From Eutreptiella sp. 'Long Island Sound 2002' (lineage: Eukaryota > Protista > Euglenida): a stretch of 64,000 nucleotides of DNA. Below, in pieces: positions 5,843 through 29,100 of this stretch. The notes beneath the pieces were generated by a model. That model saw only the letters and a program-made list of their open reading frames with translations. It did not search any database and was not told the DNA's origin. The stretch spans positions 27,404,001 to 27,468,000 of the forward strand of contig OZ038379.1 in assembly GCA_964036045.1 (NCBI GenBank), given 5' to 3'. How positions within the stretch are numbered: position 1 is the first letter of the stretch; every line of letters starts with the position of its first letter. Both the position numbers and the translations under genes were made by a program.

Positions 5843-6868
5843 TCAAGACTGAATATTGGGACCGAGCTGGTGGGGGAGGGAACATCAGCTGTGACTGGTG
5901 AGGGACATCAAGAATGATTCACACATTGATGGCTCTTGACAAAATGAAATTAGCTTGCAAGTGAACCCCATCACCACGAGGCCCACTTTCAAGGCTTTTT
6001 GGACTTCTAAGGGGCCAAAATGCCCCAAAATGGGTTCAAAATGGGCTCATTTCACCCGTTTGTGCACCCCAAATGGTCTCTGATGAGGTTTGGAAAAATG
6101 CGTTTTTGACCCATTTTTGACCCATTTTTGGTCCCAAAACAGCCCATTTTCAAGGCATTTTGGGATTTTCGGAGGACCAAAATGGGCCACCACGAGCTCA
6201 AAATAGTCCAAAAACTCTTGTTTTAGCGTCGCACATGGTCTAGGATCATTTTTGAGAAAAGTCATCTTTTTGCCCCTACTGGACCCTGTTAACCCATTTG
6301 GGCTCCCACCTTGTTGGGCTTGAGCTTGCAGCTTGCAGCCTACTGGGCCTAGGTATTGGGGTCTAGGCGTCCGTTTGGGCAGTTCTGAGGGGTGGAAACC
6401 ACAACAAGTGGGGGGTTGTGGGTGGAGAAGGTGCCCTCGGAATCGCATTTTGAGCCATATAGCCAAAGATATGGCCTATTCCTGGTTTGTGGCTGTCAGC
6501 ATTTGGAGCTTCTGGGGGCCTTTTTGGGCCGTTTCCGGGACATATCATGGTGTTAGAGGGCCGCAAAGAGCTCGTTGACATGGGGAAGTCAAGCCGCACG
6601 TGAAGTGTACCCACCGTTTCCCTTCGCTTGGCCGTTTTGAATGTGTTCCAGGGCTTTTTTGGCCCAAAAATGGCTGTTTTTGGCCCTAAACTGCAGTTTT
6701 TGAAACTGAGGTCCGCCACTTGCGAATCCCGTTCCCGGCCGCCACCGTTGAGTTTCTTGCTCAAACTTTGTGTGTGATTGTACTTCACACCCATAGGTAT
6801 CATCCACCAAAATTTCACCCGAATCGGAAGCACCACGACGGAGTTCTGATTTTTACCCATTTCGCGCG

Positions 6869-6903
<35 letters not shown>

Positions 6904-6976
6904 GCTAAACCTGGTAGGTCCACCCTAGACACTAAAAAGGGTTATAAAACCAAGACTGGTTCCACGAGCTCGGTGA
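5843..6976. mobile_element. Telomere-repeat-flanked cassette, copy A (1134 bp)
   Basis: CCCTAA|TCAAGACTG…CTCGGTGA|CCCTAA; 13-bp sub-terminal inverted repeat at 5861-5873 / 6962-6974 (1 mismatch); (GCTT)n at 6871-6903; colinear with copies B and C. Confidence 0.85.
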
Positions 6977-7156
6977 CCCTAACCCTAACCCTAGCCCTAG
7001 CTCTCACCCCAGAGGGAGGGCAAGGGGAGGTAACGGGAGCCTGTGCCCCCCCCCCCCCCTCACCACCCCAAATCGCCCCACCTGGACCCCCCCCCCAACC
7101 GACCCTCCTGACCGCCCCCCCCCCCCAATCGCCCCTCCCTGAACCCCCCCCTCCAA

Positions 7157-7193
<37 letters not shown>

Positions 7194-7439
7194 GGGGCCT
7201 TCGGCCCACTTCTACTAGGGGGGGAGTCGCGTCTAAAAGCGAGGGGACGGCCCACCCGTGCTTGGGGGAGAATTTCCACCCCGGAAGAAGAGGTAGAAGA
7301 GGAAGAAGATGAGGAAGAGCAGGACTCCAAAACCAAAAATGGCCGGGGTGCCCTTCCTGCGGACAATACCCCCGCGCAGTGAAAAAACCCCTTAAACCCC
7401 CCCCAAACCCCCCCTTTTTTAAATTTGGCTCTGCGGCAG

Positions 7440-9216
7440 GTTGTAAGCATGATATCCGATTTCCGAGACTCCACCCCCTCGGTTTCCTGGCTGGGGCGAG
7501 GGCATGGCTCCCCCATGGGCTGCCCTCTGCTCGCTGTCTGCCGTTTGCGATCTGTAGGGGACTCCTAGAATCGATTGTTGCCGGCAGCCGTGGATGGAAG
7601 CCCCAGGAGGTGCAGGGGCCGGTGGTGCGTATATATATTGATGCGGCAGAGAGCCCGAGTTGGTTGGGTGAGTTTTATGTTGGCGTCTAGAGTTCCGTTG
7701 GCGCTGCTGTGCCCCGCTTTCCGCCCTGGGTGGACATGCAACAGTCACTCGAGCGGTTCGGCGTCTGTGCTTAGGACGTCGTTTGTGGGTCCACATGGGT
7801 CACCGCCATGTGGATCTAGTGCTCGATAATATAGGTGCCATAGAGCAGGTGCTCCGGGGGCGGGCGGCAACTCTTGTGGTCACCCAGCAGCGTATCGTGC
7901 GCCGCATCGCGCACCACCTCTGATGGCAGGGCGTTTCGTTAGGACTTAGGTATGTAGAGAGCGCTCAACCCGGCAGACTGTATGGGCATGTGGGGGTTAG
8001 GAATGGGGGCTAGGGACATGGTGGTCGAGAAATGCGCAAAGGCCCTGGTGTACAACCAGCAGCCGGGAAGGGTGTGGGGTAGGGTGGGGGACAAGGAATT
8101 GCGCCTGACTGTTTGGGATGGCATCGTGTGTGTGTGCATGTCTACCCCGCCCTTGTATAGTGTGGTCTCATGAGGACCTCGGCTTACGCTAAAGTTGTAC
8201 ACGAGACGGGGAGCGCGGGGATGGCCCGCCTGCCGGAGCCCGCACCCCGGATACCCCCGCCTCCCCCTAGTGGCGGGGGTATCAGCCGACAATCAAAGTT
8301 GGCAAAGGGCAACGGAGTCACGCCCGAAGCGCCCGAGGCAGGCAGGCCCGGGAGTGCTACAAGGAGTGCAAGAACTGATTGCAGAACTGGTGGAGAAGGG
8401 CTACAGGATAGTGTACACTGATGGATCGTCGAAGCGACTGGGCCACAAGGACATGCGCAGGGCCGGGGGATTTGGCGTGTTCGCGGCGGAAGACGACCAA
8501 GGACCAGAGGTACGCTTCTGTGGCTACGTACCAACACATTACAGGCAAACAAATAACGGAGCAGAGCTTTGGGCAGCCGTGGAAGCCTTACAGGGTTTCT
8601 GGGTGCCAAAATTGGCTCACAATACCTGCAGCTGGGAGCGACTGGCAGGGCCCAACACTGGAAGTCAAAGGGATGGACAACCACATCTGGAAAACTGCAA
8701 GTCCACGTCCCAGTCTGGGAAATGCTGCTCCAGGAAATGGCGACGCCGGGAAGAGAAGTCAGGTGGGAGCATGTCCTAGCTCATGTCAACGTGCAGGGAA
8801 ATGAGATGGCGAATGGATTGGCCATGGAAGGCATGTGTTCAAGCCCACTGTGGTCACAGCATGTTGCACCAAAATCATCATCAAGGTCAGAGTCCACGGT
8901 GGGTTTGAGGGGAGGGTCGGGATCAGAGTCAGAGGGCACAAGGGCACTCTGGTCATCCCTGGGTATGGTACCCATGGACAGTGATGAACTGACAGGGGAA
9001 GCATCCGGGGAGCCAGCGCCACGTGGGATGGGACTGTACTCCTCAAGCAATACAGAAAGTGAGGAAATGAGACCAGGACACACGCACCAAGGAGTGCTGT
9101 CGAGTGCACTGTCAGCAGCAGACACACTGTCCTTCAGCACTGATGTGAGTGACACTAGGCGACAGCGCAAGAAGCGAAGGCTCAGGAAACGCAGGAACCC
9201 AGGACAGGGTCAATAA
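7440..9216 (+). pseudogene. 5'-truncated, decayed LINE ORF2 C-terminus with RNase H (frameshift near 8610)
   Basis: RNase H1 motifs IVYTDGS, QTNNGAEL, WKSKGW, WEHVLAHVNVQGNEMANGLA at 8400-8830; basic tail RRQRKKRRLRKRR; the 5' boundary is approximate. Confidence 0.8.
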
Positions 9217-9452
9217 TGCCAGAGCCAGAAGCCCTTGCACAATGGAACAGGCATCCCACAGGCACCAAGCACAGCAATGCATGTCTGAAACACCTGTGTT
9301 CTGACGCAGAGTCTGCATCACATGAGCTGCGTTTTGTCGCAGTAGAGCTTGCAACACATGGGCTGCGTTCTGCCGCAGTGAGCAGCAGCACGCACAGGAG
9401 AACACCAAGCAGCTGAACGCCGCGTCCTGTCGCGGAAAGGCACCCAGGCGTT

Positions 9453-10094
9453 ATGCCGTCTGGGAGGACACAGCAGGAGAAGGGATCTCACCAGCAGCGG
9501 TATGGCCCATACACACACATCCAGCCAACCCCAAAGAAGGTCAAGCCTCAGCAAGAACGCCAGCGTTTCAAGGTGCAAGCACTGAGTCAGCTGGACGCCA
9601 TTGCGAACGAAGGACTGCAAGCAGTTGAAGCAGAACTGACCACAATGGCCTGGGCCCGCAATCAGCAGATCTGGCTCCGACTGGACCAACCACATGGCAC
9701 CAGGATGCAGTGTGAGATTGTGGACAACCATGGGGAACCACTGCAGATGAGCAATCAGGAGCTCTACTCGGTGATGGTCCAGATCAACTGGACCCTGAAG
9801 ACCCAGGCTCTGGCGAACATGCAGGTCCAGTGGCGACCCAAAAGTGCAGACAAGTGGCACCCGTTCTAGTGGGAGGCGATCCTCCACTGTCCGACGGCAG
9901 AAGGACACAGAGCAGTGCCCTCCTCGGTAAGCAGAGCTGGAGATTGCATGCATGTGTGGCTGGCAGGCCGAGCGGACCTCTTGCGATTGTTCCAAAGAAC
10001 GCTCTTCAGGCAGGCGGACCCGGTACCCGGGGACGCTGTGCGGTTCCTCTACACACTGCTGAACACGCCCCCATGCGAAAGAAGATACGCATGA
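9453..10094 (+). pseudogene. Unknown 213-codon ORF downstream of LINE RNase H ORF (copy 2; premature TAG at 9867-9869)
   Basis: The TAG corresponds to CAG in copy 1; the frame stays open to TGA 10092-10094 (…LHCPTAEGHRAVPSSVSRAGDCMHVWLAGRADLLRLFQRTLF…). Confidence 0.55.
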
Positions 10095-10154
10095 CAGGGG
10101 GTGACAAAAAGTAGAAGAAGAGTGGAGCGCATGGTGCCATGGTGCGGAAAACCC

Positions 10155-10296
10155 ATCGTCGTGGCCCAGTGGATACACCACACCTCTTTTGTCCTGTGGA
10201 GGATGGTTCGAACCCCGGGGGGGATAGCGATGCACCGAACAACCCGAACCCCCCTTTTTGGGCGCGAGAGAGAGGGCGCGAGAGAGAGGGAGAGAG

Positions 10297-10334
<38 letters not shown>

Positions 10335-10335
10335 G
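10155..10335 (+). other. tRNA-like Pol III head followed by (GA)n microsatellite (SINE-like)
   Basis: TGGCCCAGTGG A box, GGTTCGAACC B box, (AG)n at ~10265-10330. Confidence 0.5.
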
Positions 10336-11014
10336 AGCACAGTGGGAAAGGAACAGAGAGGTGCAACAGGAGAGAAAGAGAAGGGGAGAGCAAGAGAGAA
10401 TGGAAGGGAGAGAGTAGGAGAAAGACCCGCAGAGCGAGAGACCGGGGCTAACCGGCGCAAAGGGAGGTGGTGGGTTCGAGCTGACCAGAGTTCGAGCTGA
10501 ACAGGGTGGGTTCGAGCTGACCAAGGTAAAAGGGACGCCACGGCGGCACGGAACAGCCGAGAAATGTCAAGAAATGAAAAAGCAGGGCGCCGTAGCGCCC
10601 CTGAGCCACAGGCTCGACACGTTGTCACGTGTTGCACAGCCGAAGCAAGACTGGGGCGGCGAGAGTGCGGCCCAAGTGAGGATGACGGAAGCAAGTAGGC
10701 ATGAATGTGTGGGCGGCATGCGCATGCATGGTGGGGAGCTGAAATGGTATGCGCCACACGCCAAACAGCAATGATTTGTTGAATTGCCTGACAGACGGAG
10801 CACATACTGAAGTGCCGAGACGCCTTTGCGCCATCCAAGGCGCCATTGCGCCCTTGAGGATTGAGTATGACACGTCCTCACGAGCCAGAGAGCAAGTGCA
10901 TGACAGGGTCACGACCTGCAGGGCAAGGGTTAGAGTCTAACCGGCACTGTGGGTGGGTGGTGGGTGCGAGCTGACCTAAATGTCCAGAGGACCAGTGCCT
11001 ATGCACAGTCAGCA

Positions 11015-11388
11015 ACCACCTGGTGTGGTACAGAACTGGTCTACGCTGCAGTGCAGCAAGCAAAACACTGAACAATGTGGTTATGACCATGCACCTGTGA
11101 CACGGGGGCGTATGCGAGCCCAGTTTCCGTTGCCTCATGGCCCTAGTGGCGGCCCCACCATCGCCCCCCCCCCCCCCCCCACCCGCTACATATGCATACC
11201 AGGACGTGCATGTGTAGAGCGCTTTGAGACCTGCTCCCCCCCCCCCCCCCCCCGCAGCAACCACCTGGTGTGGTACAGAACTGGTCTACGCTGCAGTGCA
11301 GCAAGCAAAACACTGAACAATGTGGTTATGACCATGCGCTTGTGACACGGGGGCGTATGCGAGCCCAGTTTCCGTTGCCTCATGGCCC
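11015..11388. repeat. ~128-bp direct repeat (11015-11142 and 11261-11388; third copy at 1410-1535) around a poly-C/hairpin/poly-C spacer
   Basis: Near-identical ACCACCTGGTGTGGTACAGAAC…CCTCATGGCCCC segments; each ends in a CACGGGGGCG TIR-like start. Confidence 0.8.
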
Positions 11389-13487
11389 CGCAGCGCAGCG
11401 CACGGGGCATTGGGTGGAGGGGCAACCGCCCCCAACGGGGCCCCCGCTCTCGGCGGCGGTGGCAGATGTGGCAGTCGAGCAGTGTGTCCGATGACTGCCG
11501 CATCTGCTGTTGCTGCTGAGCCCGCCACTGATGCCGCGGAGCCCACTGCACCTATTGCTGAAGCCGCGGTGCTTGCTAACTGACCGCTGAGGTCACCGCA
11601 TATGGTGTTGCTGGCGCGGAGCCCGCTGAGGCTGCCGTTGATAACACCGAGCCCGGTGCACTTGCGGCTGATGCCGCGGTGCATGCTGACCCGGCCGCTG
11701 AGGCTGCTGGGGCCACTGTTTATGCTGCTGCTAGTGCGGAGCTCGTTGTGCCTGCCGCTAATGCCGCACATCGTGCTGTACCTGCCGTTGATGCTGAGGA
11801 GCCGGCCGGGCCCACCATGCGCTTGCAGGCGTCTGGGCTAGCTGTTGGGCCTAGCGCAACGATCCACATCGCCCAGGTCCCGGCGGGCTAGGGCAGCGCG
11901 GCGACGCACGCGCGGCGCGACCGCCGCTACCGTAGCGGCAACGTGCGTGGTGCCACCCGCGCCACCCTGCGGTGCCACTCCGTGGGAGAGGGGGGGCAGT
12001 TTTGCCGCCCCGATGCTCGTGGAGGGGCTAGGAGGGCCCTGACTGTGGTCGCCTGCCGGCTTGCTGGAGGGGCAGCCGCCAGCACAACGGCGGTGTGTGG
12101 AGGCCCATCCGTCCCCGCCCACGCCACCCCCATCCCTGGCCCCCCGGCCGATGCAGGCGGCGGGGTGGAGGTACTAGAGCGAGCCTCCATCGACTACAGC
12201 CCCCTAGTGTAAGCTGCCCCTGTGACCCCCTGTGTGCCTTTGACCGGATGAGTATGGCTCCATGCATGCTGGCGCTTTTTTGCGGTTGGGCGTGGAGCCC
12301 TTTGTTTGGGCGTGTGTGTAGCGTGCACGCCGCGTGAGACCCTACCCCCTTTCTTCCTCCAGGGGGGGGCGAGTACCCAGCGCCCCGCCCTTTTGATGCT
12401 GAGTGGCTGTTGGGGGGGGCTCATTCCAGCAGGCGTGTGGCCAATGTGCAGTGTGGGGTCTCGTGTGGGTACCGAGCCCTAGCGCCAGGCACGCAGGCCC
12501 TTACTTGGCGCGGAATAGACTGCGAGCGAGCAACGTGCTAAAGGGATCCGGTCCTCAAAAACACATCAACTGCACAGTACAACGTGGGAGGAGGGGGGGG
12601 GGGGTTGTGGGTCTGGTCTGTCCGCGTCTGTCTAGGTCTGTTACATGAACTGGTTCGCCCCCCCCCCCCTGTGGCAAAAACCTAGGTTATTGCTAACCTA
12701 GGTTTTGGGGGAATCTTTGCACTGCACGCGCACTGCACGCGCACTGCGCGCTACTTTTAGACTATGTTCCCCCCGAAGAGCCCCCAAGCACACCCCTTGG
12801 AAACGCCCTTAGAATTAGGTGACCCAAACTGCCCCAGCTCAAGAAAGTTGCAAACTACCTTCCCTTAACACAACACACACATGTTCCTTACGATGCCCCA
12901 GTGCCACAGGCGTGGTTTCGGTTGTGAGGAAGGGGCTCTCTCCTTTCCCTTGCGGTTAGAATCGGATTGGGGTTGAGATTGTGTAGCCACAGGGGGTTGC
13001 GAGGACTGAGAGGGTTGAGGGAGATTGGAGCTGGACGAAGCCACATCGGCCCGAGGGGGCGCAGCAACACAAGAAGCATCCAGTGTGCGTTGCCGCTTTT
13101 CTAGGACCTGCTGCGCATGTTTTGCTTGTTTCTTGGCCTCTCTCTCTCTGTTCTCACGGCGCAAACGGTCAATCACAGGCTGCAGTGTTGGCGCTTCACT
13201 GCCGCCTTCAGAGAATGGTTGGCCATCAAGCCCATCCTGGATAATTACACTTTCCTCATCCCTTGGTAAGTGGTTACCCTTGCCGAACCGCAAGATCTGC
13301 TCAATCACCTTTGGCACACCCAAACAAAGGGGGACGAAATCAGAAGTCAAAACCTCTGCTAGGGGTCACCATGATGCCCCTAGGGGCCCCTAGTATCTCA
13401 AAGTATGGGTCTCTAGTACGGCCGGACGCCCAAATAGTTGCACTGCGCGCGCACTGCACGCGCACTGCGCTTAAGGCTCCCCCTTTG

Positions 13488-14632
13488 CATGCATTGCTGG
13501 CCCTGTACCCTGACCCGCCCTGAGACACACTGACACAAGGCAACAGGACAAACTGTATCTTACTCTGGGTAAAATACCCATTCCCCCCCTCCCACACCAG
13601 TCCATGGACCCACTGACCCACCACACAGGTGCAGAAAGCGCTGCCCTCCCCCAGGGACTTGCACACATATATATCTACACACACATGTGCAGCGGTTGCT
13701 CACGCAGAGCGAAGAACCCAGGATGCCCACACTCATCAGGTGCCCAACAGGACAAGGACAACGCATGCTGTCCACGCCAGCTAGGAGCGCCGGGTCCACG
13801 GGCAACAGCCGCCTGGCCGCCCCACTTGTAATACGCGCAACGCGCACATGGCGGGTCGCGGGGAACTCGCCTCAGTAACAAACACACACAGGGCACAGGG
13901 TGTCATGCACGGGGGGCGGGGGGGTCTCAGTTGATGCCCCGGAGTCACGCCCCGGTACGCCCCGGGTGTGCAGCACCCAAGAGCCGGGCGACTGGAGGGT
14001 TCAGTGTCCAGCAGCCCGCGGGATGTCACTTAAGCTCACACCAAGGCAGCCTACATCGCCCACACCCGCATGCCAGGTCACCCATCGATAAGTGCAGGTC
14101 GGGCCAAACTCAAGGTGGTGCGGCAAGGCAGGACAGCCCGGCCAACCGGGAGGAGAGAGGAAGGTATCTCACACAACGCGCAAGCTCCGTGCCCACCCAA
14201 GCAAAGGGCTCCATGCCTAGGCCCACACACGCTAGAGCCCCCCACCCAACCCCAACCCCGCCGAAAACACCGTAAGCCTTTGCAGGCCTCAGCACACGGG
14301 AGGCCGCTGGATGCCCTCGCTGGGGCCGGGGTGCACGAGCTTGCAGGCCCGTTGCCCATCGATATATACAGGTCAGGTCCAACGCAAGGTGGCGCGTCAA
14401 AGTGGGGCAGTCCTGCGCAACAGGGACCCCCCCCCCCCCCAGGTACCGCCGCTGGGGCACCAATGGCAGTGGGCCCACAGCTACACAATACGTAGCAGCC
14501 CTGCAGCAGCTGCTGCATCATGTTCTGTACGTCAGACCCCAGCAGCACTCCCCAGAGTCAGATACAGTTTGTCCCGTTGCCTTGTGTCAGTGCGTCTCAG
14601 GGCGGGTCAGGGTACAGGGCCAGCAATGCATG
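13488..14632. mobile_element. Non-autonomous element with ~85-bp terminal inverted repeats (MITE-like)
   Basis: 13488-13570 is the reverse complement of ~14550-14632 with few mismatches; no TSD recognised. Confidence 0.75.
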
Positions 14633-16903: not shown

Positions 16904-17179
16904 ATGAGTGTCTTGTATTCCTTTCCCACGGCGGACCATGTGTCCAAAGCTGTTGCAAAGTACGTAGCCTCAAAAGCTGCTGCCTGCATTGCCGAGACGG
17001 GACGCTTCACGGTTGCACTGTCCGGTGGCTCCCTCCCCAAATTGTTGGCCACATACCTCAAAGAGGATTCTACAGTTGATTGGACCAAATGGTACGTGTT
17101 CTTTGCAGATGAGCGTGTCGTACCTCTGGACCACATGGACAGCAACTACTATGCTTGTTTCCAGGAGCTGTTTTCTAAG
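16904..17179 (+). CDS. PGL: 6PGL exon 1 (92 codons)
   Basis: Pyrimidine tract + AG (16891-16892) 11 nt before ATG; donor AAG|GT at 17180. Confidence 0.9.
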
Positions 17180-20100
17180 GTCTCTCTGGAGCATAGGGCA
17201 GTCAAGCCTGGGCAAGGGCAAGGGCTAGCGACATGAGTAGAATTGCAGGTGTTCCTGATCTGTATGAGGGCCTTACTATCTGTGCTCTGGTTGTGGTTTT
17301 GGTTGTGGTTGTGGTTGTGGTGGTGGTGGTCATGGGAAGTTGCAGGTCTTGGCAGGCAGGGTCCCCTTGGCCGGGTCTAGGGGGGGCAGGAGCCAGGACC
17401 AGCCAAAGCAGTAGCATGGGACCAGCGTCCATGATGTATAGGACTGCAGAGGTCCAAGCACCAACGGTTGAAGCATGCCGCAGCATGCCGCAGCACACTG
17501 AAAATTGGGGTGGGACCTTTTGGGGGAAAATATCGGACCAAAATATCAAACCCATCCCTGAGCAGTCAACTGCCAGAGGCAGCCAGTACTCTAGTGGTTA
17601 AATGGTGCATCTGGGAGTGAGGGGTCTTCGGTTCAAGTCCTGGGACTGGCAATCTGCAGCAATGCTGGTAAGGACAGGGGCACACAGTCCAAGCTGATTT
17701 TTTCCTTTTTTTCTGTGCTGTGCTGTGCTGTGCTGTGCTTTGACAGATCATGGTTTTCTTCACTTTGTCTTCTGATGTCTACCGTTGAACCCACTGAGGA
17801 GGGGACAACACAACCCAAGAGGAACAAGGAGACAACCAGGAGTACTACAGACTGTTTGCAGTGGGCAATTGGAGAAGGCATCAGGACCACCCATGAAATG
17901 TTTCTGTTGTGTCCATCTTTGCAGGGTGTTGGGAGATGCACTCCTTTGTGTTTGGTTCTGGGTTTTGCCGCTTTTGCAGCTTTTGGAAAAACTGGGTATC
18001 CCCCACCTACGGCTTGAAGCAGGCCGCAGCATGCCGCAGCACAGCAAGTTCTTCTTGGGGACTGTTGGTGCTTGTATAGGAGGACCAGGACCCCTGCCAC
18101 TTCTTCTTTTTTTCTTGATCTCCAGCCCACATTGCCACACAGGTCTCCATCCCTGCGGATCAGATATTCCCAATTACTGGTGGGCTATCGGCTGCAGATA
18201 CCGCTGCTGCTTACACGCAGGCTATGAAAGGCGTGTTCGGTCAGGAGTGTGCATGGCCATCCCTCGACTGCATCTTCTTGGGCATGGGTCCTGATGGACA
18301 CACATGTTCCCTTTTCCCGCAGCATCCTCTGCTTGATGAACGGCAGGTGCCCAGGACAGACCTGCAGGGGTTAGGGTTAGGGAGAAGTGGTGCCGTTCTG
18401 CAGTTTGCTGTTTAGCCTGTTGGTATTGCATTGATGCCTGCTCAGTCATCCCCCCGCCCCCCTCCCCCCCCGCCGATTTAGTGCCAGCCCTGAGCCAGGA
18501 TCTGTATGATAAGGAAGAGGTCCTTGTGTATGTAGTATTGAAGCCAGAGGTTGTGGCTGCCAAAACACGGCCAACCGAAGCACAATGAGCCAGAAGGAGA
18601 GCTGTGCATGACATAGCTGTGAGAACTGCCGAACATTGCTGCATATGCATACCAGGACGTGCATGTGTGGAGCGCTCTTTGACCTGCGTGAGGCCTCTAT
18701 GTTCCCGAGGAAATGTGGCCTCCAGGGGAGAGGCGTTGGATGTTGTAGACTGCAACCCAGCCTTATGGGCCAACAATGACTGCAAAATCATGTGGTTTCT
18801 CAGAGCATTTGTCTGGCGCATCCGGTCTGTGGCTGTGCATCACGGTTTTTAACCAATACCGGACTGTCAAACAACTGTCTGCCTGTTGTCGGTATTGCAT
18901 GCCCTTGGCAAAGAAACACGAGTGTTACCATACAGGCACGAGTGGCAGACCGGGACCGTCAACAAGGATAGAGGCACACAGCATTGCAGGGAGGTCTTTT
19001 CTCTACGTGGGAGGTGTGGGCAGGAGGGGGGAGCGCGAAAACTATCATTGCTCGACCTCCTTCTTTTCTTTGTGCATGCCCTGCTACCGCCCTTGCATTG
19101 CTGTGCCAGGGAACATCCCTGGCACGCTTTTGGGTCATCCTCTGGGTCCATTACAACACACGTCGCGCCACGTTGCTGGTCCAGATGTTGTTTTGATGGG
19201 ATGATGGTTTAAGGGGAGGCTGGTTTTCAGGTTCAGGCCAAAGAGCATATGCAGACAAGAATAAGCACATTACTGTGCCCTTGGCATCATGGGCTTGGGT
19301 GTGCATATGGCGAGGATTTGGGGATAGAAGGGCATGTGCGATACATGCTTCGGTGGGTGGATGGTGGCTGTGCGAGCAATGGCCACACAAGAATGACAAA
19401 CCTGAGACTGAGCAACGATGCACCACCACACAAACAAGACTTCACTGAGGCAATTCTGCGGCCGGGGACGGGAATGAAACAGGGTGATACATTATCACCC
19501 ACCATCTTTTCGCTTCTAACAGCGGTTTTGATCCAAAATGTCTTACGAGATTGACATAGGTGTAGTCCTTTTTAGTTGCGGATGATGCACTTTTTTTTTA
19601 TACCAGGCACCCACGGCAGGTGGGGGTGACCCTCTAAACTTTGTTGCAGCTCTTGCGGGAGTATGGGGATGTTTTGGGTTATAGACTCAACATGGATATG
19701 TGCGGTGTGGTCTTTCAAGGACCCGACCCACCACCACTAGGCATGGTTGTGATGGCGTAAAGGTGTGAACGAAGGTTAAAGATTTCGGTACATGGCTGGG
19801 CCGGGCAACTATTTTCGACCATTACCAAGGGCCGCCGTCAAAATTAATGGTTGAGGCCCAATTTTTGGCATCGCTGCCCCTTAAGGCAGAAGAAAAAATA
19901 CAGGCGAAATACATTTGGGTGTACCTTGTGCTTCGGCACATTGCAATTTTGTTTTTTCCGACACACCAAGTTATCCGAAAACCCAATGTGGCCATGTGTA
20001 TTTCATTGGGGATTCGCACTTGGTGTCTGCCCACAATGCATTGGAAACTACGATATGAGCGCGGGGGGTATGCATTGGGGTCAGCACGGAACTTCCTCTT

Positions 20101-23100
20101 GTGGTGCCACTCCTTGGCATACGTTAGAACGTTGAGAGCTACTTCCGAGATGGGGGCCGCCAGAAAGGCTCCCAAGCTACAATTCGATACTGTTTATTTC
20201 AAGAGCTTTTTGTGGTTCCGGTAGCCACAGGACCATTGGCCAGTAACATTGGCCAGTGGTGAGTACATCTTTAGTGGCATACTCCACTTTCTCACAACTT
20301 TGTCCGGGGAACTGTCCGGGGGGACTTCTGTCCGCCCCTGTTTTTCTGGGCGGATAGTAGTTCACAACCCCCCTTGTATCTCTGCTGCATTTCTGCGATA
20401 GTTTTATTTGTTTGTGTGTGCACCATGTTTTCATTCACCTCGTCGCCCGCGAAGACCTCTGCCAACTGTGGCGGAGGCTCCGGTCCCCCCGACTAGGACT
20501 TGTCCAACATGTCCCCGATTCAGATTCTTGCGTTCTTGGCGCAACAGCAAGCGGCGCTGGCGTCGCTACAGACTAAGCTGGACGAACTCGGCGTTAGCGA
20601 CAAATCAGGCGTCCCCAATCTGACAAACGCGGCAGTCACCGAGCTGTTGGCCACGCCGAAGTTGGCATCATCGATGTGACAATGTGGGGACACTTTGGGC
20701 GACTATGTCAAGGCAGTGGAGAGGCCGGTTAGCAGGGCTGGCGGAGGTGGAGATCACAGGGATCGTTTGGCCTATCGGATGTGGTCCGTGTTGGTCGAGT
20801 CCCAAAGGGCGTACACAGAGAAGTTTGCCGACCCGGCCGCGCTCTCCGCATCGCAAGCGACCAACCCCCTCGACGGGCTGGTTTGGCAGGACTTCCGACA
20901 CCAAGGTGGGGATAATTTTACCTACAAAGGTATACAATTTGCCACGAGGGGCGATGTGTTGCATTGGAGGACGGCCAAGGGCCATTGGGTGCCTGAAATG
21001 GCTCCGGCATCGTAGCCGTGCAAGCAATGCCTGGACATGGGTCTGAATGCAAAGGCGGCCCGGCATTGGCACTACCAGTGCCCCAACTTGCCTTGAATTC
21101 AAGGGACTCGGACCTTGGGATGGGCACCAGGTGCCCTTGGAGTCAAGCCCAAAGATGGGTTCGGGCATGTCGTCAGCGTACCGGAGACCATGTCTATGGG
21201 ACGTTTTCGTGTGGCAGCACTGGCGCGGACGGCGGCACGTACCGGTGTTCGCCTGACCGACGCGGCGACTGCCGCCATGCGCAGCTGGGCATCCAAGACC
21301 ACCCGCCGATATCAGGGTTCCCTGTTCGCGGTCGCGGACTTCGAGGACGAGCGTGCAATGCCTGTTGGGCCATCTGTGTGCCTATCAGAATACCTGTCCG
21401 CCAAGGTATCGGCTGGGATTGCCCGGTCGACCCTCCAAAACGTGGTATCCGCGGTACGCGGCGGAGGAACTGGGCCTCCTGCCACCCACCGTCCTCCCCA
21501 TCCATTGGAGGTTGGCCAAGGGGGGACATTTGTCGGGGCGCCAGCCCTATTTTAGTCCCCCCGCGCTGGCCTTCTTGTGTCAGACATCGCGCACCCGCGA
21601 GCAACGTATTGTTGTGGGGCTCGGGTGCCTCAGCTACACGCTCTGGCGGCGAGTATCCGAAGCGGCCACCATTGCGCCGAGAGACCTGCGAGGAAACGGC
21701 ATGGCCTCCTTCATCGCTACGAAAGTGCGGGGGCCATCTGAATAGAAACGTCCTTTGGGCCGCTGGGCAGTTGGCTGGGCTGCTTATCTCTTGGCTATGG
21801 TGGACGAGTCGGCGGATCCGGCATAGCCGTTCGCGGAACGGGGAGCGCCGAGATTGGAAGGGTCCGTTACTGACATGCTGCGGGACTCGCGGTGGAGCAA
21901 ACTGTGGTGGCACGTGTTCCGACGGGCAGGCTGTGCAGCGTGCTACCACCGTGGGCCCCACCTCCGGTTCCTCATGTGGTGGGGCCGGGTGGCGGCGTCT
22001 GCAAACGGCATTGGAATGCGCTAACAGGTACGGCGACCCGGAGGTTGTGCGGCCCCTTCTTTTGCTTGTGACAGATGCTGGGGACTTTGTGGGCACTGTA
22101 GTGGAGGTTCTTGTCATGGACCTGTGGCCGGCGGCCATGTATGCCAAGGATACGGTTGCCATCAAGGACCTGGTCAAGGATTCGGGCACCCAGCCGGCAA
22201 CCGACAAATGTGCACCAGAGCGGGCCACGGAAGGAGGTGGCGATGAGCCTTCCGACTCCGATTCCTCCACGTCGTCCTCCGAGTCTTCTCTTGGGTCCGC
22301 TAGATCGGACGCAGCAGCCAAGAAGAGCGATGTCGGGGAGCGCACGGTGGGGACTCACTCGGGGAAACGCGCCGTGGGCACCTTCGTCGTCGGGGTCAGA
22401 TCCACTACCGGCCGCCAACCACGCGGCGGCGGGGGTGAGCGGAAGCGGGGACCGGTTGGTACCCTAGTCCCCAGGTCCACAGGCAGAGCTGCGAGCGGTA
22501 CAACAGCGCCGAAGCGATGGACGTGGCTTGCTGTGGGCGGTGCTGTACGTGTCCACGGCCCTGTACCTGGTGGCCCGAAGGTGGTGCTGGGTGGTGGCTC
22601 GGTTGCGGGTCGTCCCGCCGCCAGGGGCCGTCTTCATAGGCGTGGCACCGAAGGGCCTGCGGGCTCCGGGTCGTCCCCAAAAGGTGCCTCGGCGGGGGGA
22701 GGGGTCCAGAGGCTCTTGCCCGTTTGGAGAGTTGGCAAGCGGAGGGGCCAGCACCGGTGACGTGGCGTGGAAGTTCAAGCCGCGGGGAGAGGGCCATCAC
22801 AACCCCATCACCCTGTGAACGCGCTGCATTCCACGGGTCTCGGCGGGGGCAGGGGTTAGGCGACCAGCTGGCATGGGGCCCCCGGAGAGTGCCAAACAAT
22901 CAAAACGGTATATCTTCCGCCAGCCGTGGGGACCCTCGGCCGGGTGGTATGCTAGACCCCTTTCATGTTTGTGGTCGGCCCTCGCCAGATCCCATGGTAC
23001 CGCGAGATGGCCTGCGGCCGCCGTTATTTCGGGGGGGGGCGGGGGAACCTCTCTTCCTGCTTATCCTTCGCAAATTGTCCGGCAAGCTGGCATGGTTGTC

Positions 23101-26100
23101 CGTGGCACTTAAAACGAGTGTCCGCCTTCCCATGCTGAGGGCGCACCTTTTCCTCTTGAGGGCCTTTGTGACGGTCGAAGATTTTCGGCTTCTTGAGCCC
23201 ATGAGCGTTATTTTGTGCGCGCTCGGTGAACTCCAGCCGGACGGATGGGCCAGCCTCATGCATGGTTCCACATCCCCCAAACCCGTCCCGCAAACACCTA
23301 ACCCCGCGGTGGCGGCTAGGGGATTAGGGGACATTAGGACCTACCACATCTTGGATGCATTATGGGATGAGGTTGTGGGGGAGGGGGTGGATGTCGAGCA
23401 ATTGGCCTCCGAGTTTGCGCTTGAGATCTCCCCACCACCATTGGCCCTTCACAGGCGAGAAACAGACCCCCTGGTGGAACCCATGTTGCGCTTCTTGAGG
23501 GTGATGGTGTTGTCGAGAGGGTGGTGGGGGACCCAGGACGGCCCGCCACGTGCTGGCCCTTCATTATTCCAAAATCATCGGAGAAAGTTTCGGTCATTTT
23601 CCACTTAGTGGACTTCAAGGGCACCATGCCCCGCCCGGCCCGTTTTCCTTTGTGCAGTTGGGAGGACATGGCAAATGGCCTAAGTGCATGGCCTAAGCAT
23701 GAGCCCCTTTATTGCACACACATAGATTTGAAAAACGGCGTTTCGGTTTGGTTTTGGACTGGGGGGGGGGGGGGGGGTCATGTACCATATGCGCTTTATG
23801 CCGTTTCGCCGGAAATTTTCCCCGTTGCTGTGTCCGTTGGCCTTGCAAAAGGTGATCGAGGGGATAGTCCCGCCGCATATGATCATTTTCCATTATTTGG
23901 ATAATTTTCTCTTGCTGGGCGGGTGTCCCAGGGAACTCAAGGAAGTCACCCGTCGCATGGTGGAGGCGTTACATGTGGCTGGTTTTTTGGTGTCGCCCAA
24001 GTCGGTTTTGGATCCGACGACACGCATATTGTTCTTGGGGAAGCACATTGATACCCAGGCGAGGTGCATTTGGTCCCACCCGCGTGCAATTTTGCAAATG
24101 TATGCGCAGTGGCTGCGTTTGGTGATAGCAGCCCACCCCCACCCTCGCCACTTAAATAAAATATTGGGCTTTATTCAGTGGCATGTGCGGCCACATAGCG
24201 GTGGGGGGCCGTGGGACCGCCGGTGCCTCTTAAGGTGCTGCATGGGTTGGCCACGGCGATTGTTTTTGCTATGGAGCCGTGGTCTCCGCTTGATGCGCTG
24301 CGATGGTCATTGAATGTGCTATGGGACAGCCGGTGAACCTGTGCCGCCATGCATTCGCCACAATGTTCGTGGGTGCGGCTTTGGAATTTTTTCGTTATCG
24401 TGCGGGGTTGTTTTTGCCTAGTACGCATGAAGTACGGTCTATTGTCATTCCTCGCAACCGGCACGCTCGACAAAGTGCTGAGTTGTGGGGGTCGTGTTCG
24501 GCGATGCGGCTGGCAAGGCGGTTGGGTTGGCCGTTTCTGGTTTTGGTTACCGACTCGCAAGCACGGGGGGGCGGCCGGGCCCGGTCCTTGTATGCGACAC
24601 CCCCCAGCCCCCCCCCCCCCCCGGGTTTTGAAAGATTGTGGTGCCGGGTCGGCTACCAGCAAGTGTCCCTAGAGAAAACTGTCCGGCGCCAAAGGCGCCA
24701 ATTTTTTTTTCAGGCTATGTGTTTATGCTCAAAATGCCCAAAATTTTGTAGAGAATTCATATTTGGGCTACAGCAGGGCTGCAGGCCCTAGCCCTGACCC
24801 TAACCCTAAACCTAACCCTAATCAAGACTGAATATTGGGACCGAGCTGGTGGGGGAGGGAACATTAGATATGAATGGTGAGGGACACCAATGAGTTACAC
24901 ATTGAAGGCCGTTGACAGGGTGGAATCAGCTTGCAAGTGATCCCCTTCACCACAAGGCCCACTTTCAAGGCTTTTGTGGACTTGTGAGGGGCCAAAATGC
25001 CCCAAAATGGGCTCAAAATAGGCTCATTTCACCCGTTTGTGCACCCCAAATGGTCTAGGATGAGTTTTGGAAAAATGTGTTTTTGACCCATTTTTGACCC
25101 ATTTTTGGTCCCAAAACAGCGCATCTTCAAGGCATTTTGGGATTTTCGGAGGACCAAAATGGGCCACCCCAAGCTCAAAACAGTCCAAAAACACTTGTTT
25201 TAGCATCACACATGGTCTAGGATCATTTTTGAGAAAAGTCATTTTTCTGCCCCTATTGGACCCTATTGACCCATTTGGGCACCCACCTGTTTGGGCTTGA
25301 GCTTGCAGCTTGCCGCAGCCTACTGGTTTTGGGTACGGGGGTCTAGGCGTCCATTTGGGCAATTTTGAGGGGTGGAAACCACAAAACGAGGGGGGTTGCG
25401 GGTGGATTACGTGCCCTCGGAATCGCGTTTTGAGCCATGTAGCCAAAGATATGGCCTATTCTTGGTTTGTGGCTGTCGCCAGCCAATCTGCACAAAATTT
25501 GGGGCTTGTGGGGGCCTTTTTGGGCCGTTTCTGGGACATATGGTGGAGTCAGAGGGCCGCAAATGGCTCGTTGACACAAGAAAGTCAAGCCGCACATGGA
25601 GTGCACCCACCCTTTCCTTTTCCTTGGCCGTTTTGAATGGGTTCTAGGGCTCTTTTGGCCCAAAAATGGCTGTTTTTGGCCCTGAACTGCAGTTTTTGAA
25701 ACTGAGGTCCGCCACTTGCGACACCCATTCCCGGCCGCCACCGTTGAGTTTCTTGCTCAAACTTTGTGTGGTTGTCCCTCACACCCATAGGTATCATCCA
25801 CCAAAATTTCAGCCGAATGTGAAGCACCACGACGGATGTCTGATTTTTCCCCATTTCGCGCGTGCTGCTTGCTGCTTGTTGCTGCTTGCTGCTTGTTGCT
25901 GCTTGCTGCTTGTTGCTTGTTGTAGCTGCTGCTAAACCTGGTAGGTCCACCCTAGACCTTAAAAAGGGTTATAAAACCAAGACTGGTTCCACCAGCTCGG
26001 TGACCCTAACCCTAACCCTAGGGCTGACCCTAGGGCTAACCCTAACCCTAGGGCTAACCCTAACCCTAACCTTAATCAAGACTGAATATTTGGACCGAGC

Positions 26101-29100
26101 TGGTGGGGGATGGAACATCAGCTATGACTGGTGAGGGACATCAAGAATGATTCACACATTGATGGCTCTTGACAAAGTGGAATCGGCTTGCAAGTGAACC
26201 CCATCACCACGAGGCCCACTTTCAAGGCTTTTTGGACTTCTGAGGGGCCAAAATACCCCAAAATGGGCTCAAAATGGGCTCATTTCACCCGTTTGTGCAC
26301 CCCAAATGGTCTAGGATGAGGTTTGGAAAAATGCGTTTTTGACCCATTTTTTACCCATTTTTGGTCCCAAAAGAACCCATTTCCAAGGCATTTTGGGATT
26401 TTCGGAGGACCAAAATGGGCCACCACAAGCTCAAAATAGTCCAAAAACTCTTGTTTTAGCGTCGCACATGGTCGAGGATCATTTTTGAGAAAAGTCATCC
26501 TTTTGCCCCTACTGGACCCTGTTGACCCATTTGGGCACCCACCTGTTTGGGCTTGAGCTCGCAGCTTGCCGCAACCTAGTGGGCCTAGGTATGGGGGTCT
26601 AGACGTCCATTTGGGCAATTTTGAGGGGTGGAAACCACAAAAAGTGGGGGGTTGCGGGTGGAGTAGGTGCCCTCGGAATCGCATTTTGAGCCATGTAGCC
26701 AAAGATATGGCCTATTCCTGGTTTGTGGCTGTCGGCATTTGGAGCTTCTGGGGGCCTTTTTGGGCCGTTTCCACGACATATCATGGAGTTAGAGGGCCGC
26801 AAAGAGCTCGTTGACATGGGGAAGTCAAGCCGCACGTGGAGTGTACCCACCGTTTCCCTTCGTTTGGCCGTTTTGAATGGGTTCCAGGGCTTTTTAAGCC
26901 CAAAAATGGCTGTTTTTGGCCCTAAACTGCAGTTTTTGAAACTGAGGTCCGCCACTTGCGAATCCCGTTCCCGGCCGCCACCGTTGAGTTTCTTGCTCAA
27001 ACTTTGTGTGATTGTACTTCACACCCATAGGTATCATCCACCAAAATTTCACCCGAATACGAAGCACCACGACGGAGTTTTGATTTTGGCCCATTTCGCG
27101 CGTGCTGCTTGCTGCTTGCTTGCTGCTTGCTGCTTGCTTGCTTGCTTGCTGCTAAACCTGGTAGGTCCACCCTAGCCAACCAAGACTGGTTCCACCAGCT
27201 GGGTGACCTTAACCCTAACCCACCCCCCCCCCCTCACCCCATCCGACGCCCCCCTGACCCCTGGCCAGACCCCCCCCGACCCCCGGCTTGACCCCCCCCG
27301 ACCTCCGGCCGGACCCCCCCCCCCCCCAACACTGCCCCCCCCCCGAGTTTTGACAGATACTAGGGGGGTATGTCGCATCAGGACCGGTTGTAGTCGCCCC
27401 CCGTGCTCGCAAGTGGCAGGAGCACACGTGGTTTCGCTGCGCGCGCGTACTTGGCTGCATTGGCAAAACCGTCTTTTGAGAGGGACTGTTATTCAGACGA
27501 AGTAGTGTGGTGGTGGGTCTGCATTGGATTTCCACTGAATTTTAGCCGGCGGACCCGCTGAGTCGGCTTGATGCGGTAGCAATCTGGTCCCCATTACATG
27601 CTTTGCGTTTGGCGCAGGTCCGTTGGCACCATGTGCGTACACGTGGACCTGAGCCGGATTTGCCAGGGGTCGTTTGGTTGTGAAGGGAGAAGGGTACCGA
27701 AGGTGACTTCGATCCTGTGTTGTTGCTTGTGTGAACTCCTGTCTGCCCCTATTTTTTTGGGCGGCCGGCTGCTGCAGTTTTGCGAAGTTTTTATTTCCCG
27801 CCCCCCCCACCCATCCGTCGGCACAACCACTATGCCCCGCGCCGTCACTCTGCCGTGCTTCCATCCGCTTCCACCGAGGGCGCCTGTGGATGCCCGCTAG
27901 CACCAGGCGGTGGAGCGGTTGCGAGCGCGTTAGCAACCTGTGCATTACATTCGCTTTTTGCCTAAGTGAACTCACCGCCTGCTTGCAACCCGCATGCCTA
28001 GCCGTGCTCGGTCTGCGGCGCAACTCCGCAATTTGGCGTATGCACTCTTCGTCATCCTCACGCTGCGCCCGGGATTGCTTTGGCTATTCGACCTTCTCAT
28101 GGAGGCCTTTGCCGTTCTGGTAGCGACGGGTCTGCGGCTACTGGCATACATAAGACGGACTCGCCACGGTGTGGGCGTCAGCTTGGCCGTGGTTTGTGCG
28201 GCCTTGCAAGGCCGGTTTGGATGTGCGCAGCGCATGGCCCAGCGTGCTCCGCGTCTGCACTTGCGACTTGCGGGAGATGCCTGGGTGGTGGAGCGTCACG
28301 TCGCCCCCATTTGGGACCAGGCCCTCGTACCCCTGCGCCGTGCATTTGACTTGATGCCGCAACTCTGGTGGGACAGACCAGCAAATCGCTTGTTGGTGGT
28401 GTCGGGGTGGCTGGACGTGCGGTTTTTGGGTCACGCCGGACACTTCGTCGGAGTTACCTGGGGTTTTGGGGTGTATTCCCCCGTTTTGGGCGTGTGATGG
28501 TTGGGGATGTGGAAGTAGCGGCGTGAGAGGTCGTGCGTAGGATGCCGCTCGTGGAGGAATTTTGGTATTTTCTTTTGCCACCGCCAGGCACCGAGGGCGA
28601 GCGGCTAGCCGTACAACCACTGCCCCTTGGCGCCAGAGGTGGGAAGGCGACGCATTTTCGTGGCGGCTAGCAGGGCGGCCGCTGATTGGGTGGCCCACCG
28701 TACCCCTGTGCGTGCGTCTATGGATGGCTCGTGTGCCTGCCCGCCACTGCATCCTTGATGTTTGTGGGGAGCTTGAGCTGCCCGTTCTCGTTTTTTTTTG
28801 AGTGGTGTGAGTCGCCCAGGACATCACAACCACAACGGTAGATCTCCTGCCGACCGGTGCGCTCACGTTACATTGTTCTTTTTGTCTCGGGAGTGGGGAC
28901 CGCAGCCGGGTTGTGGCCGCTGTCCTTGGGCTACCGTACGCGTTGCCAACCCTGACCTGACCGGTGCGTTGGCGTTTGCCCTTTGCCTGAGGTGGGTGGT
29001 GAGTTTCTTTGTGACGCTATACTGACCCTCTCTCAAGCACGCGGCTGACCTTGGGCGCGGGAAGTGTCGCCGACACGCTGTGATGGCTTGTGGCACTTAG

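What the first reader, a model, noticed from the sequence alone, without database searches (positions are those of the whole stretch)
5843..27206. Non-coding ~1.15-kb cassette sitting at a fixed GGG^TTA phase in telomeric repeats, three copies
Seen: copies at 5843-6976, 24822-26003 and 26076-27206 all read CCCTAA|TCAAGACTG…CT(C/G)GGTGA|CCCTAA (CCTTAA variants flank copy C), i.e. GGG|element|TTA on the other strand. Each has a 13-bp asymmetric sub-terminal inverted repeat (ACCGAGCTGGTGG/CCACCAGCTCGGT), an AAGACTG direct repeat at both ends and a (GCTT)n microsatellite near one end. B and C are tandem, joined by a 72-bp telomeric array. The flanking arrays and shells differ between loci. Knowledge: TATE, the YR element of Leishmania braziliensis, is reported to insert at GGG^TTA; asymmetric sub-TIRs plus a microsatellite also describe Helentron-associated HINE/DINE-1 elements. 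Inference: a telomere-repeat-specific non-autonomous element that may be undescribed. The neighbouring YR element is not itself in telomeric DNA, so the mobilising partner is unidentified.
Basis: partly seen in the sequence, partly recalled or inferred. Interest (0 to 1): 0.85.

Follow-up and report, generated by a model that had tools for sequence, protein, structure and literature searches.

The report
Mobile element that targets telomere repeats
A 1.1-kb non-coding jumping element of an alga always sits at the same position and in the same direction inside TTAGGG-type repeats, mostly in short telomere-like tracts carried by an older transposon. It is a real and abundant family, and an unusual variant of known target-specific transposons.

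Summary
Copies at 5843-6976, 24822-26003 and 26076-27206 are 91-95% alike. All start TCAAGACTG after CCCTAA and end GGTGA before CCCTAA. They are non-coding.

Each copy lies inside a TIR "shell" with an 8-bp target duplication (shell A 5538-7260, shell BC 24562-27405). The two shells belong to one family but are much more diverged than the cassettes.

Using a spurious ORF as bait, I fetched ten more loci from a public assembly. All 32 5' ends and all 33 3' ends lie in CCCTAA-like hexamers, in one phase and one orientation. Spacers within arrays are mostly multiples of 6 bp. Copies form a star-like tree. Only 4 of 20 arrayed copies have their nearest relative in the same array, and three arrays lie outside any shell. 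So the cassette is itself mobile and site-specific, not a passenger.

A sister family shares about 700 bp of core but has different ends with co-varying inverted repeats, and it always sits in (TA)n.

The end architecture fits Helitron2/Helentron (HINE) best. The phase equals that of Leishmania TATE. No autonomous partner was found, so the mechanism remains inferred.

The scan had already noted this family elsewhere in this genome (for example s1-202944, s1-202942, s1-199768).

The parts
5843..6976 (+). cassette copy A (1134 bp), written in C-strand orientation
24822..26003 (+). cassette copy B (1182 bp), member of a distinct subfamily. Its nearest relative is in another locus (96.9%).
26076..27206 (+). 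cassette copy C (1131 bp), main subfamily. Its nearest relative is copy A (95.3%).
5861..5873 (+). 5' sub-terminal inverted repeat of A, 18 nt from the end. Equivalents lie at 24840-24852 and 26094-26106.
6962..6974 (-). 3' sub-terminal inverted repeat of A, 2 nt from the end. Equivalents lie at 25989-26001 and 27192-27204.
6869..6904 (+). (GCTT)n-type microsatellite of A. Equivalents lie at 25863-25921 and 27103-27151.
5770..5842 (+). degenerate to perfect CCCTAA tract left of A (perfect over 5819-5842)
6977..7000 (+). CCCTAA-type tract right of A
24786..24821 (+). CCCTAA-type tract left of B
26004..26075 (+). 72-bp degenerate CCCTAA-type spacer between B and C
27207..27221 (+). short CCTTAA/CCCTAA tract right of C
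5538..7260 (+). TIR shell A (hAT-like carrier). The 8-bp TSD CTTGGGGG lies at 5530-5537 and 7261-7268. Contigs of three runs join 5530 to 7262, which is an empty site.
24562..27405 (+). TIR shell BC, same TIR family but a diverged subfamily. The 8-bp TSD CTCGCAAG lies at 24554-24561 and 27406-27413. It is inserted in the decayed RT region of a retroelement.

Best explanation
The cassette is a high-copy, non-coding, non-autonomous mobile element. An enzyme supplied in trans integrates it in one orientation at one phase of TTAGGG/CCCTAA hexamers: TAA^CCC on the C-strand. On the G-strand this reads GGG^TTA, or GGGT^TAGGG given a 1-nt ambiguity.

Its usual landing sites are short interstitial telomere-like tracts. 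Most of these are carried inside an older cut-and-paste TIR transposon with an 8-bp TSD (hAT-like). Each insertion leaves hexamers on both sides, so later copies land beside earlier ones and build head-to-tail mosaic arrays. Occasional local tandem duplication, and transposition of the shell with its cargo, add further copies.

I think the most likely enzyme is a Rep-helicase (HUH) transposase of the Helitron2/Helentron group, which would make the cassette HINE-like.

Shown: the discrete ends, the lack of coding capacity, the invariant phase and orientation, the independence from the shells, and the sister family with other ends and another target.

Inferred: mobilisation in trans, recognition of the 13-bp inverted repeats, and the rolling-circle chemistry.

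Sub-confidences: mobile and site-specific, about 0.9. HUH/Helitron2-like mechanism, about 0.45.
For: Ends and phase. All 32 of 32 5' ends follow a CCCTAA-like hexamer, and all 33 of 33 3' ends precede one. All have the same orientation. Spacers are 6 (x5), 12 (x7), 18 (x3), 11, 29, 42, 60 and 72 bp.

Independence from local duplication. The tree is star-like, with about 94-95% identity between any two copies. Within-array median identity is 92.1% against 93.3% between arrays. Only 4 of 20 arrayed copies have their nearest relative in the same array, and 3 of those 4 are one recent triplication. Window copy B is closest to a copy in a non-shell locus.

Independence from the shells. Shell arms of one type are only 82-88% alike in their unique part, except one young pair at 96%. 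Between types they are far less alike. The arrays in L004 and L008 lie in unrelated DNA. The same TIR family also exists with a different 3.2-kb cargo and no hexamer tract.

Non-coding. Ka/Ks is 0.56-0.96 for the only conserved ORF, and the shifted control frames give similar values.

Abundance. The bait ORF found 564 clusters. Word depth on the cassette is about 10 times that on the shell arm.

Sister family. It shares about 700 bp of core at 75-85% identity and the (GCTT)n tract. It has other termini and a different 15-bp inverted-repeat pair with the same asymmetry. It is always inside (TA)n.

HINE/Helitron2 fit, read on the G-strand. The element starts 5'-TC. The sub-TIR lies 2 nt from the 5' end, and its partner is sub-terminal at the 3' end. 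It carries a microsatellite, some variants have central repeats, and it forms tandem clusters. This matches the descriptions in PMC4067079 and PMC5148889.

Precedent. Telomere-repeat-targeting Helitrons with non-autonomous derivatives are described in Paramecium (PMC13085455).
Against: No autonomous element with these termini was found in the window, in about 190 kb of fetched loci, or in metagenome contigs.

The terminal hairpins are not better than shuffled sequence (z -1.1 and -0.7).

The 3' sub-TIR lies 18 nt from the end here, and 9 nt in the sister family. HINEs have 38-60 nt and FoHeli elements have about 20-40 nt.

The ends are not CTRR.

A T^T target is allowed only by the 1-nt ambiguity, and it does not obviously fit the (TA)n family.

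Two copies have the same variant hexamer on both sides (CCTTAA in copy C, CCCCAA in L008). This hints at a 6-bp duplication or a shared crossover core, which a Helitron would not make.

All loci were chosen because they hold a cassette, so unoccupied tracts and true telomeres were not sampled.
Confidence: 0.5

Rival explanations
1. The cassette is integrated by a tyrosine recombinase. A circular copy of the cassette, DNA or reverse-transcribed, carries one hexamer-like core between its joined ends and recombines with a CCCTAA core in the target. On this reading it is a non-autonomous relative of TATE-like or Crypton-like elements.
For: The phase and the tandem clustering match TATE of Leishmania braziliensis, which belongs to the same phylum as euglenids (PMC6681497, PMC2696322). 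The minimum spacer of exactly one hexamer, seen 5 times, is what core duplication predicts. Two copies have matched variant hexamers on both sides. The orientation is fixed. YR retroelements are present in this window (weak RVT_1 hit). A 13-bp inverted-repeat pair flanks the would-be circle junction.
Against: There are no split direct repeats and no internal complementary region. The inverted repeats would be 20-26 bp apart across the junction, not the 6-8 bp of classical YR sites. There is no TT duplication, since at most one T is shared. Most variant hexamers are unmatched. No partner was found.
Confidence: 0.2
2. The cassette is a cut-and-paste DDE transposon (a MITE) that recognises the hexamer and makes a 6-bp target-site duplication. 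The duplication is invisible inside a repeat tract.
For: Both ends read TCA...TGA and have inverted repeats close by. Spacers are one hexamer or multiples of it. Variant hexamers are matched around copy C and around one L008 copy. Target-specific DDE families exist, for example Dada (my own knowledge).
Against: The inverted repeats are offset by 16 nt at one end only. The sister family conserves this asymmetry, with a 7-nt offset. The orientation relative to the hexamer is the same in 33 of 33 cases, which is not expected from a symmetric TIR mechanism. Sixteen of 31 copies have different hexamers on the two sides.
Confidence: 0.12
3. The cassette is RNA-mediated. It is either a SINE-like passenger of a telomere-repeat-specific LINE (TRAS/SART-like), or an endonuclease-deficient Penelope-like element primed on G-rich ends.
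For: The phase and orientation are fixed, and copies lie head-to-tail separated by short telomeric repeats. The cassette appears in contigs of RNA-labelled runs (X9, X15). Earlier notes report a Penelope-type hammerhead insertion and an RNase H-bearing head-to-tail family with CCCTAA junctions in this genome (s1-228053, s1-195324; both unchecked).
Against: There is no poly(A) or other 3' tail. There are no random 5' truncations: 31 full copies, and the only short form is a shared variant. No hammerhead or any other Rfam family was found. Arrays grow at interstitial sites inside 2-8-kb shells, which end-priming cannot do. Co-varying inverted repeats are not a requirement of TPRT. The RNA libraries may hold DNA, as the tool itself warns.
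Confidence: 0.08
4. The cassette is not mobile by itself. It is an internal long-period tandem repeat of the TIR shell, copied only when the shell moves or when arrays recombine unequally.
For: Ten of 13 arrays sit in shells. One array is a recent triplication that includes its mutated spacer. One pair of shells is as similar (96%) as the cassettes they hold. L008 shows duplication of a cassette together with its spacer.
Against: Arrays occur outside shells. Array-mates are no closer to each other than random pairs, and subfamilies are mixed within arrays. The cassettes are younger than most shell arms. The sister family lies in (TA)n with no shell at all.
Confidence: 0.05

Closest known systems
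HINE / DINE-1 and Helitron2-type non-autonomous elements (Helentron group; FoHeli of Fusarium)
   Same: Both are non-coding. Both have 12-15-bp sub-terminal inverted repeats placed asymmetrically, 2 nt from one end and sub-terminal at the other. Both start 5'-TC, carry an internal microsatellite, have central repeats in some variants, show no evident TSD, and tend to cluster head-to-tail (PMC4067079, PMC5148889).
   Different: The target here is a specific phase of a 6-bp repeat, not T-rich DNA. The 3' sub-TIR is closer to the end (18 nt). The terminal palindrome is not convincing. No Rep-helicase partner sharing the termini has been shown.
TATE (telomere-associated transposable element) of Leishmania braziliensis, a VIPER-like tyrosine-recombinase retrotransposon
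   Same: [quoted passage not shown]
   Different: TATE is a coding element of several kb (gag-like, YR, RT/RH) with split direct repeats and a TT duplication, and it lies at chromosome ends. The cassette is 1.1 kb and non-coding, has inverted rather than split direct repeats, shares at most one T, and is seen here in interstitial tracts.
Telomere-repeat-inserting Helitrons of Paramecium aurelia and their ORF-less derivatives
   Same: Both are flanked on both sides by telomeric repeats of one polarity, have an absolute orientation bias, have abundant non-autonomous derivatives, and carry internal satellites (PMC13085455).
   Different: The Paramecium elements are a separate Helitron clade. They are many kb long, lie at real chromosome ends, and end in CCAA after a stem-loop. 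No fixed phase within short interstitial tracts, and no carriage inside another transposon, was reported for them.
TRAS/SART telomere-repeat-specific LINEs of insects (my own knowledge, not checked in a paper here)
   Same: Both insert at a fixed phase and in a fixed orientation in a short telomeric repeat.
   Different: TRAS and SART are coding LINEs with poly(A) tails and an AP-endonuclease. None of these features is seen in the cassette.
Tandem-repeat-containing MITEs and Helentron-borne satellite-like arrays of bivalves
   Same: In both, a small TIR or HINE element carries a variable number of internal repeat units (PMC3879986, PMC7492417, abstracts read).
   Different: In those elements the internal units are short satellite monomers that expand in place. 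Here the units are 1.1-kb elements of mixed subfamilies that arrived independently.

Membership tests
Helentron-associated HINE / Helitron2-type non-autonomous element | 12-15-bp sub-terminal inverted repeats | tested here: met
   A 13-bp pair is present in all copies. A 15-bp pair is present in the sister family.
Helentron-associated HINE / Helitron2-type non-autonomous element | 5' sub-TIR 2-4 nt from the terminus, 3' sub-TIR well inside (38-60 nt in mite HINEs, about 20-40 nt in FoHeli) | tested here: inconclusive
   Read on the G-strand, the 5' repeat starts 2 nt from the end, which meets the feature. The 3' repeat ends 18 nt from the end, or 9 nt in the (TA)n family, which is shorter than described (PMC4067079, PMC5148889).
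Helentron-associated HINE / Helitron2-type non-autonomous element | short palindrome or stem-loop near the 3' end (hairpins at both ends in Helitron2) | tested here: inconclusive
   Small stems exist (5 bp around an AGAC loop, 3 bp at the other end), but terminal folds are no better than shuffles (z -1.06 and -0.65). They are absent in the sister family.
Helentron-associated HINE / Helitron2-type non-autonomous element | insertion into TT (or T^T/C) without target-site duplication | tested here: inconclusive
   GGGT^TAGGG is allowed by a 1-nt ambiguity. The presence or absence of a 6-bp duplication cannot be read inside a repeat.
Helentron-associated HINE / Helitron2-type non-autonomous element | autonomous Rep-helicase(-endonuclease) partner sharing the termini | not tested
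None was found in the window or in the fetched loci (and the Pfam columns). The genome itself could not be searched.
Canonical Helitron (Helitron1) | 5'-TC, 3'-CTRR, hairpin about 11 nt from the 3' end, insertion between A and T | tested here: not met
   5'-TC is present, but the ends read GTGA or TTGA, and the junction is A^C or G^T.
TATE / VIPER-like tyrosine-recombinase retrotransposon | insertion at GGG^TTA of telomeric hexamers in tandem clusters | tested here: met
   PMC6681497
TATE / VIPER-like tyrosine-recombinase retrotransposon | split direct repeats (A1 ... B1 A2 B2), gag-like, YR and RT/RH ORFs, TT duplication | tested here: not met
   There is only an 8-bp direct repeat and no B1/B2 pair. 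There is no selected ORF. At most one T is shared at the junction.
DIRS-like element | inverted terminal repeats plus an internal complementary region that stores the circle junction | tested here: not met
   No internal match of 8 nt or more to the joined termini in either orientation.
Endonuclease-deficient Penelope-like element (Athena/Coprina type) | hammerhead ribozyme motif in the pseudo-LTR; variable 5' truncation capped by telomeric repeats | tested here: not met
   No Rfam family reached its gathering score in the window. No hammerhead appeared at E up to 5 in 24000-28000. Copies are full length with one fixed 5' end.
hAT-like TIR transposon (the carrier shell, not the cassette) | 8-bp target-site duplication and short terminal inverted repeats | tested here: met
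   The TSDs are CTTGGGGG and CTCGCAAG, with a third example in L001. An empty site for shell A is seen in three runs. The transposase was not identified.

The most novel reading that the evidence does not exclude
The cassette and its (TA)n-seeking sister share a core but carry different end modules with co-varying inverted repeats. Together with further families noted elsewhere in this genome, they may form one superfamily in which the end module sets the target simple repeat. That would be DNA-guided target choice of the kind known for IS200/IS605 HUH transposons, here in a eukaryote, using telomere-like tracts inside other transposons as safe landing pads.
Probability: 0.2. Interest if true: 0.85.

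Novelty: new variant of a known kind. Interest (0 to 1): 0.6.

Why it matters
The cassette shows natural integration aimed at a single phase of a 6-bp repeat, in one orientation, at hundreds of sites.

If the end modules really set the target, with the same core going to CCCTAA in one family and to (TA)n in the other, the system would be a tractable eukaryotic model of programmable, sequence-guided insertion.

It also shows how interstitial telomere-like tracts can be occupied and lengthened, and how one transposon can serve as a harmless landing pad for another.

The shared GGG^TTA phase with TATE of Leishmania raises a testable question: is telomere-hexamer targeting old in Euglenozoa, or did it arise twice by convergence?

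Tried and rejected
Rfam search of the window and a permissive search of 24000-28000: no hammerhead or any other family.

The conserved 140-codon frame on the G-strand looked like a gene. Its Ka/Ks is 0.56-0.96, and shifted control frames give similar values, so I rejected it as coding. I used it only as bait.

Two metagenome scans, one with the shared 5' terminus and one with a variant interior: 0 hits each.

Pfam scan of 20 window ORFs: no Rep-helicase, integrase or DDE transposase. The only hits were RNase H, a weak RVT_1, RING and LON domains.

Read laying could not show cassette empty sites. The tool skipped the tract positions as repeats (5790-5850 and 6862-7010).

DNA folds of the termini were not significant.

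A search for an internal circle-junction copy or for split direct repeats found none.

I tried to show an intact RT frame across the shell BC insertion. The frame is decayed, so this gave no information.

A test for a 6-bp TSD by matching variant hexamers on the two sides was ambiguous.

The look-up of sequencing runs failed twice before it answered.
Full report
**Observation**

The three copies lie exactly where stated. A MAFFT alignment and a blastn self-comparison show units of 1134, 1182 and 1131 bp. Excluding gaps, A-C identity is 95%, A-B 90.6% and B-C 91.3%.

Each unit starts TCAAGACTG right after a CCCTAA-type hexamer and ends GGTGA right before one. The 13-bp inverted repeat, the 8-bp direct repeat CAAGACTG at both ends and the (GCTT)n tract are all present. 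Telomere-type 12-mers occur 16 times in the window against 0.35 expected, and all but one touch a cassette.

**The shells**

Reading outward from the tracts, each locus is bounded by terminal inverted repeats beginning CACGGGGGGGC and by a perfect 8-bp direct duplication. For 5538-7260 the duplication is CTTGGGGG. For 24562-27405 it is CTCGCAAG.

The arms of the two shells align but are strongly diverged and full of indels. Contigs of three public runs join 5530 to 7262, which is the empty site of shell A. Shell BC sits in the decayed RT region of a retroelement.

The same TIR family also occurs with a different 3.2-kb cargo and no hexamer tract (L001 11753-15181; L003 about 2100). So the carrier is an ordinary cut-and-paste family with an 8-bp TSD, hAT-like, and some of its members hold a telomere-like tract.

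**More copies**

The only frame kept open in all three copies (140 codons, G-strand) has Ka/Ks of 0.56-0.96. Shifted control frames give similar values, so the cassette is non-coding.

Gene callers nevertheless predict this frame, so I used it as bait. It found 564 protein clusters, nearly all from one ENA assembly. Ten look-ups returned about 190 kb around such ORFs.

Across the window and these loci there are 32 5' ends, 33 3' ends and 31 full copies. Every 5' end follows a CCCTAA-like hexamer: 25 exact, 7 with one or two changes or a 1-nt deletion. Every 3' end precedes one. Orientation is always the same. Spacers within arrays are 6 (five times), 12 (seven), 18 (three), 11, 29, 42, 60 and 72 bp.

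**Mobile or passenger?**

Five results point to independent mobility.

1. The tree of copies is star-like. Almost any two copies are 94-95% alike, whatever their locus or shell type.
2. Array-mates are not closer than random pairs. Median identity is 92.1% within arrays and 93.3% between arrays. Only 4 of 20 arrayed copies have their nearest relative in the same array, and three of those four are a recent triplication in L001 that also copied a mutated spacer.
3. Subfamilies are mixed within arrays. Window copy B is closest to a copy in L008 (96.9%) and to one in L004, each of which sits beside a main-subfamily copy.
4. Shell arms of one type are 82-88% alike in their unique part, and one pair is 96% alike. 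So most cassettes are younger than the shells that hold them, although some shells did move with their cargo.
5. The arrays in L004 and L008 lie in unrelated DNA that offers only two to four hexamers.

Local duplication and shell transposition do occur as secondary processes.

**Sister family**

The more distant bait hits led to elements that share about 700 bp of core (75-85% identity) and the (GCTT)n tract with the cassette, but have unrelated termini. These termini carry a 15-bp inverted-repeat pair of a different sequence, with the same asymmetry: 2 nt from one end and 8-9 nt from the other. All copies seen (L006, L008, L010) lie inside (TA)n, often in tandem.

Other ends go with another simple-repeat target. 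The two arms of the inverted repeat co-vary between the families.

**Mechanism**

Read on the G-strand, the cassette starts 5'-TC. It has the inverted repeat 2 nt from that end and its partner 18 nt from the other end. It carries a microsatellite, and some variants have central repeats. It clusters head-to-tail and shows no evident duplication. This is the layout described for HINE/DINE-1 and Helitron2-type elements (PMC4067079, PMC5148889). Helitrons that insert into telomeric repeats with absolute orientation bias are known from Paramecium (PMC13085455).

Five points weigh against this assignment. The terminal hairpins are not significant. The 3' repeat is closer to the end than described. 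The ends are not CTRR. A T^T target depends on a 1-nt ambiguity. No Rep-helicase partner was found.

The phase equals that of TATE in Leishmania, which also forms tandem clusters (PMC6681497, PMC2696322). One-hexamer spacers and two cases of matched variant hexamers would suit a recombinase core or a 6-bp TSD. However, the cassette has neither split direct repeats nor an internal junction copy.

A retroelement reading is weakened by four findings: no tail, no truncation series, no ribozyme, and growth of arrays at interstitial sites.

I therefore rate 'mobile and site-specific' at about 0.9 and the HUH assignment at about 0.45.

**Other evidence**

The cassette is held by runs under three organism labels and by estuary and urban metagenomes and metatranscriptomes. 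One RNA-labelled run has a 1074-nt contig covering almost the whole unit, but DNA carry-over cannot be excluded.

Summed word depth on the cassette is about ten times that on the shell arm. This is only a rough guide.

A loose end at 5885 shows another family that shares the first 43 bp and then diverges.

After that call I sent no hexamer letters to any search tool.

**Known or new**

I found no paper describing this family or any Euglena transposon of this kind. This is absence in the searched library only.

The scan itself has already noted the family at several other places in this genome, and one follow-up reached a similar nested-transposon reading.

- the 31-copy census;
- the evidence against passive copying;
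- the non-shell contexts;
- the relative ages of shells and cassettes;
- the homology of the core between the CCCTAA and (TA)n families;
- the checks against the TATE, DIRS, Penelope and Helitron definitions.

I did not verify the organism. Earlier notes call it an alga and mention euglenid genes.

Noticed in passing
L006 9556-10916; L008 about 10660-11860; L010 1-5760 and 9880-14700: A sister family of the cassette always lies inside (TA)n, often in tandem with roughly 150-bp (TA)n spacers. It shares the core and the (GCTT)n tract but has different termini and a 15-bp inverted-repeat pair.
   Followed up: partly
L001 11753-15181 and L003 about 1500-2101: Members of the same TIR family as the shells carry a different 3.2-kb cargo. 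It includes a Cys/His-rich ORF and 40-bp tandem repeats, with no hexamer tract. These may be the longer relatives from which the shells derive.
   Followed up: partly
L002 9060-9465, L009 11722-12438, L003 10479-10508: A cassette variant has positions 37-131 replaced by 390-680 bp of other non-coding DNA. In L003 a form cut at the end of that insert again follows CCCTAA and again begins TCA.
   Followed up: partly
window 5885 (loose ends in runs X1, X4, X15): Many contigs share the first 43 bp of the cassette and then continue with unrelated sequence. This is a further family, or a possible partner, with the same terminus.
   Followed up: no
window 47130-51673: A 72-bp satellite (9 copies) is followed by about 3.9 kb of a 10-bp G-rich satellite (unit GGGGACCTAT and its permutations) that switches strand once at about 48430.
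   Followed up: partly
window 1-1537 and 8905-11389: Two copies of an RNase H-bearing LINE-like repeat (88% alike) lie in direct orientation on either side of the shell A locus.
   Followed up: no
window 18371-18384: An unoccupied GGTTAGGGTTAGGG lies next to what reads like an exon of a 6-phosphogluconolactonase-type gene. So two hexamers alone are not always occupied.
   Followed up: no
window 54908-55897 and 56483-57382: One ORF has a RING finger domain and one has a LON substrate-binding domain. These are probably host genes.
   Followed up: no
L007 10480-10695: One cassette copy carries a roughly 210-bp unrelated insertion flanked by a 12-bp direct repeat (AAAATGGGCTCA).
   Followed up: no
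L004 1-20516: A segmental duplication of about 14.8 kb (doublecortin-domain ORFs repeated) surrounds the non-shell cassette array.
   Followed up: no
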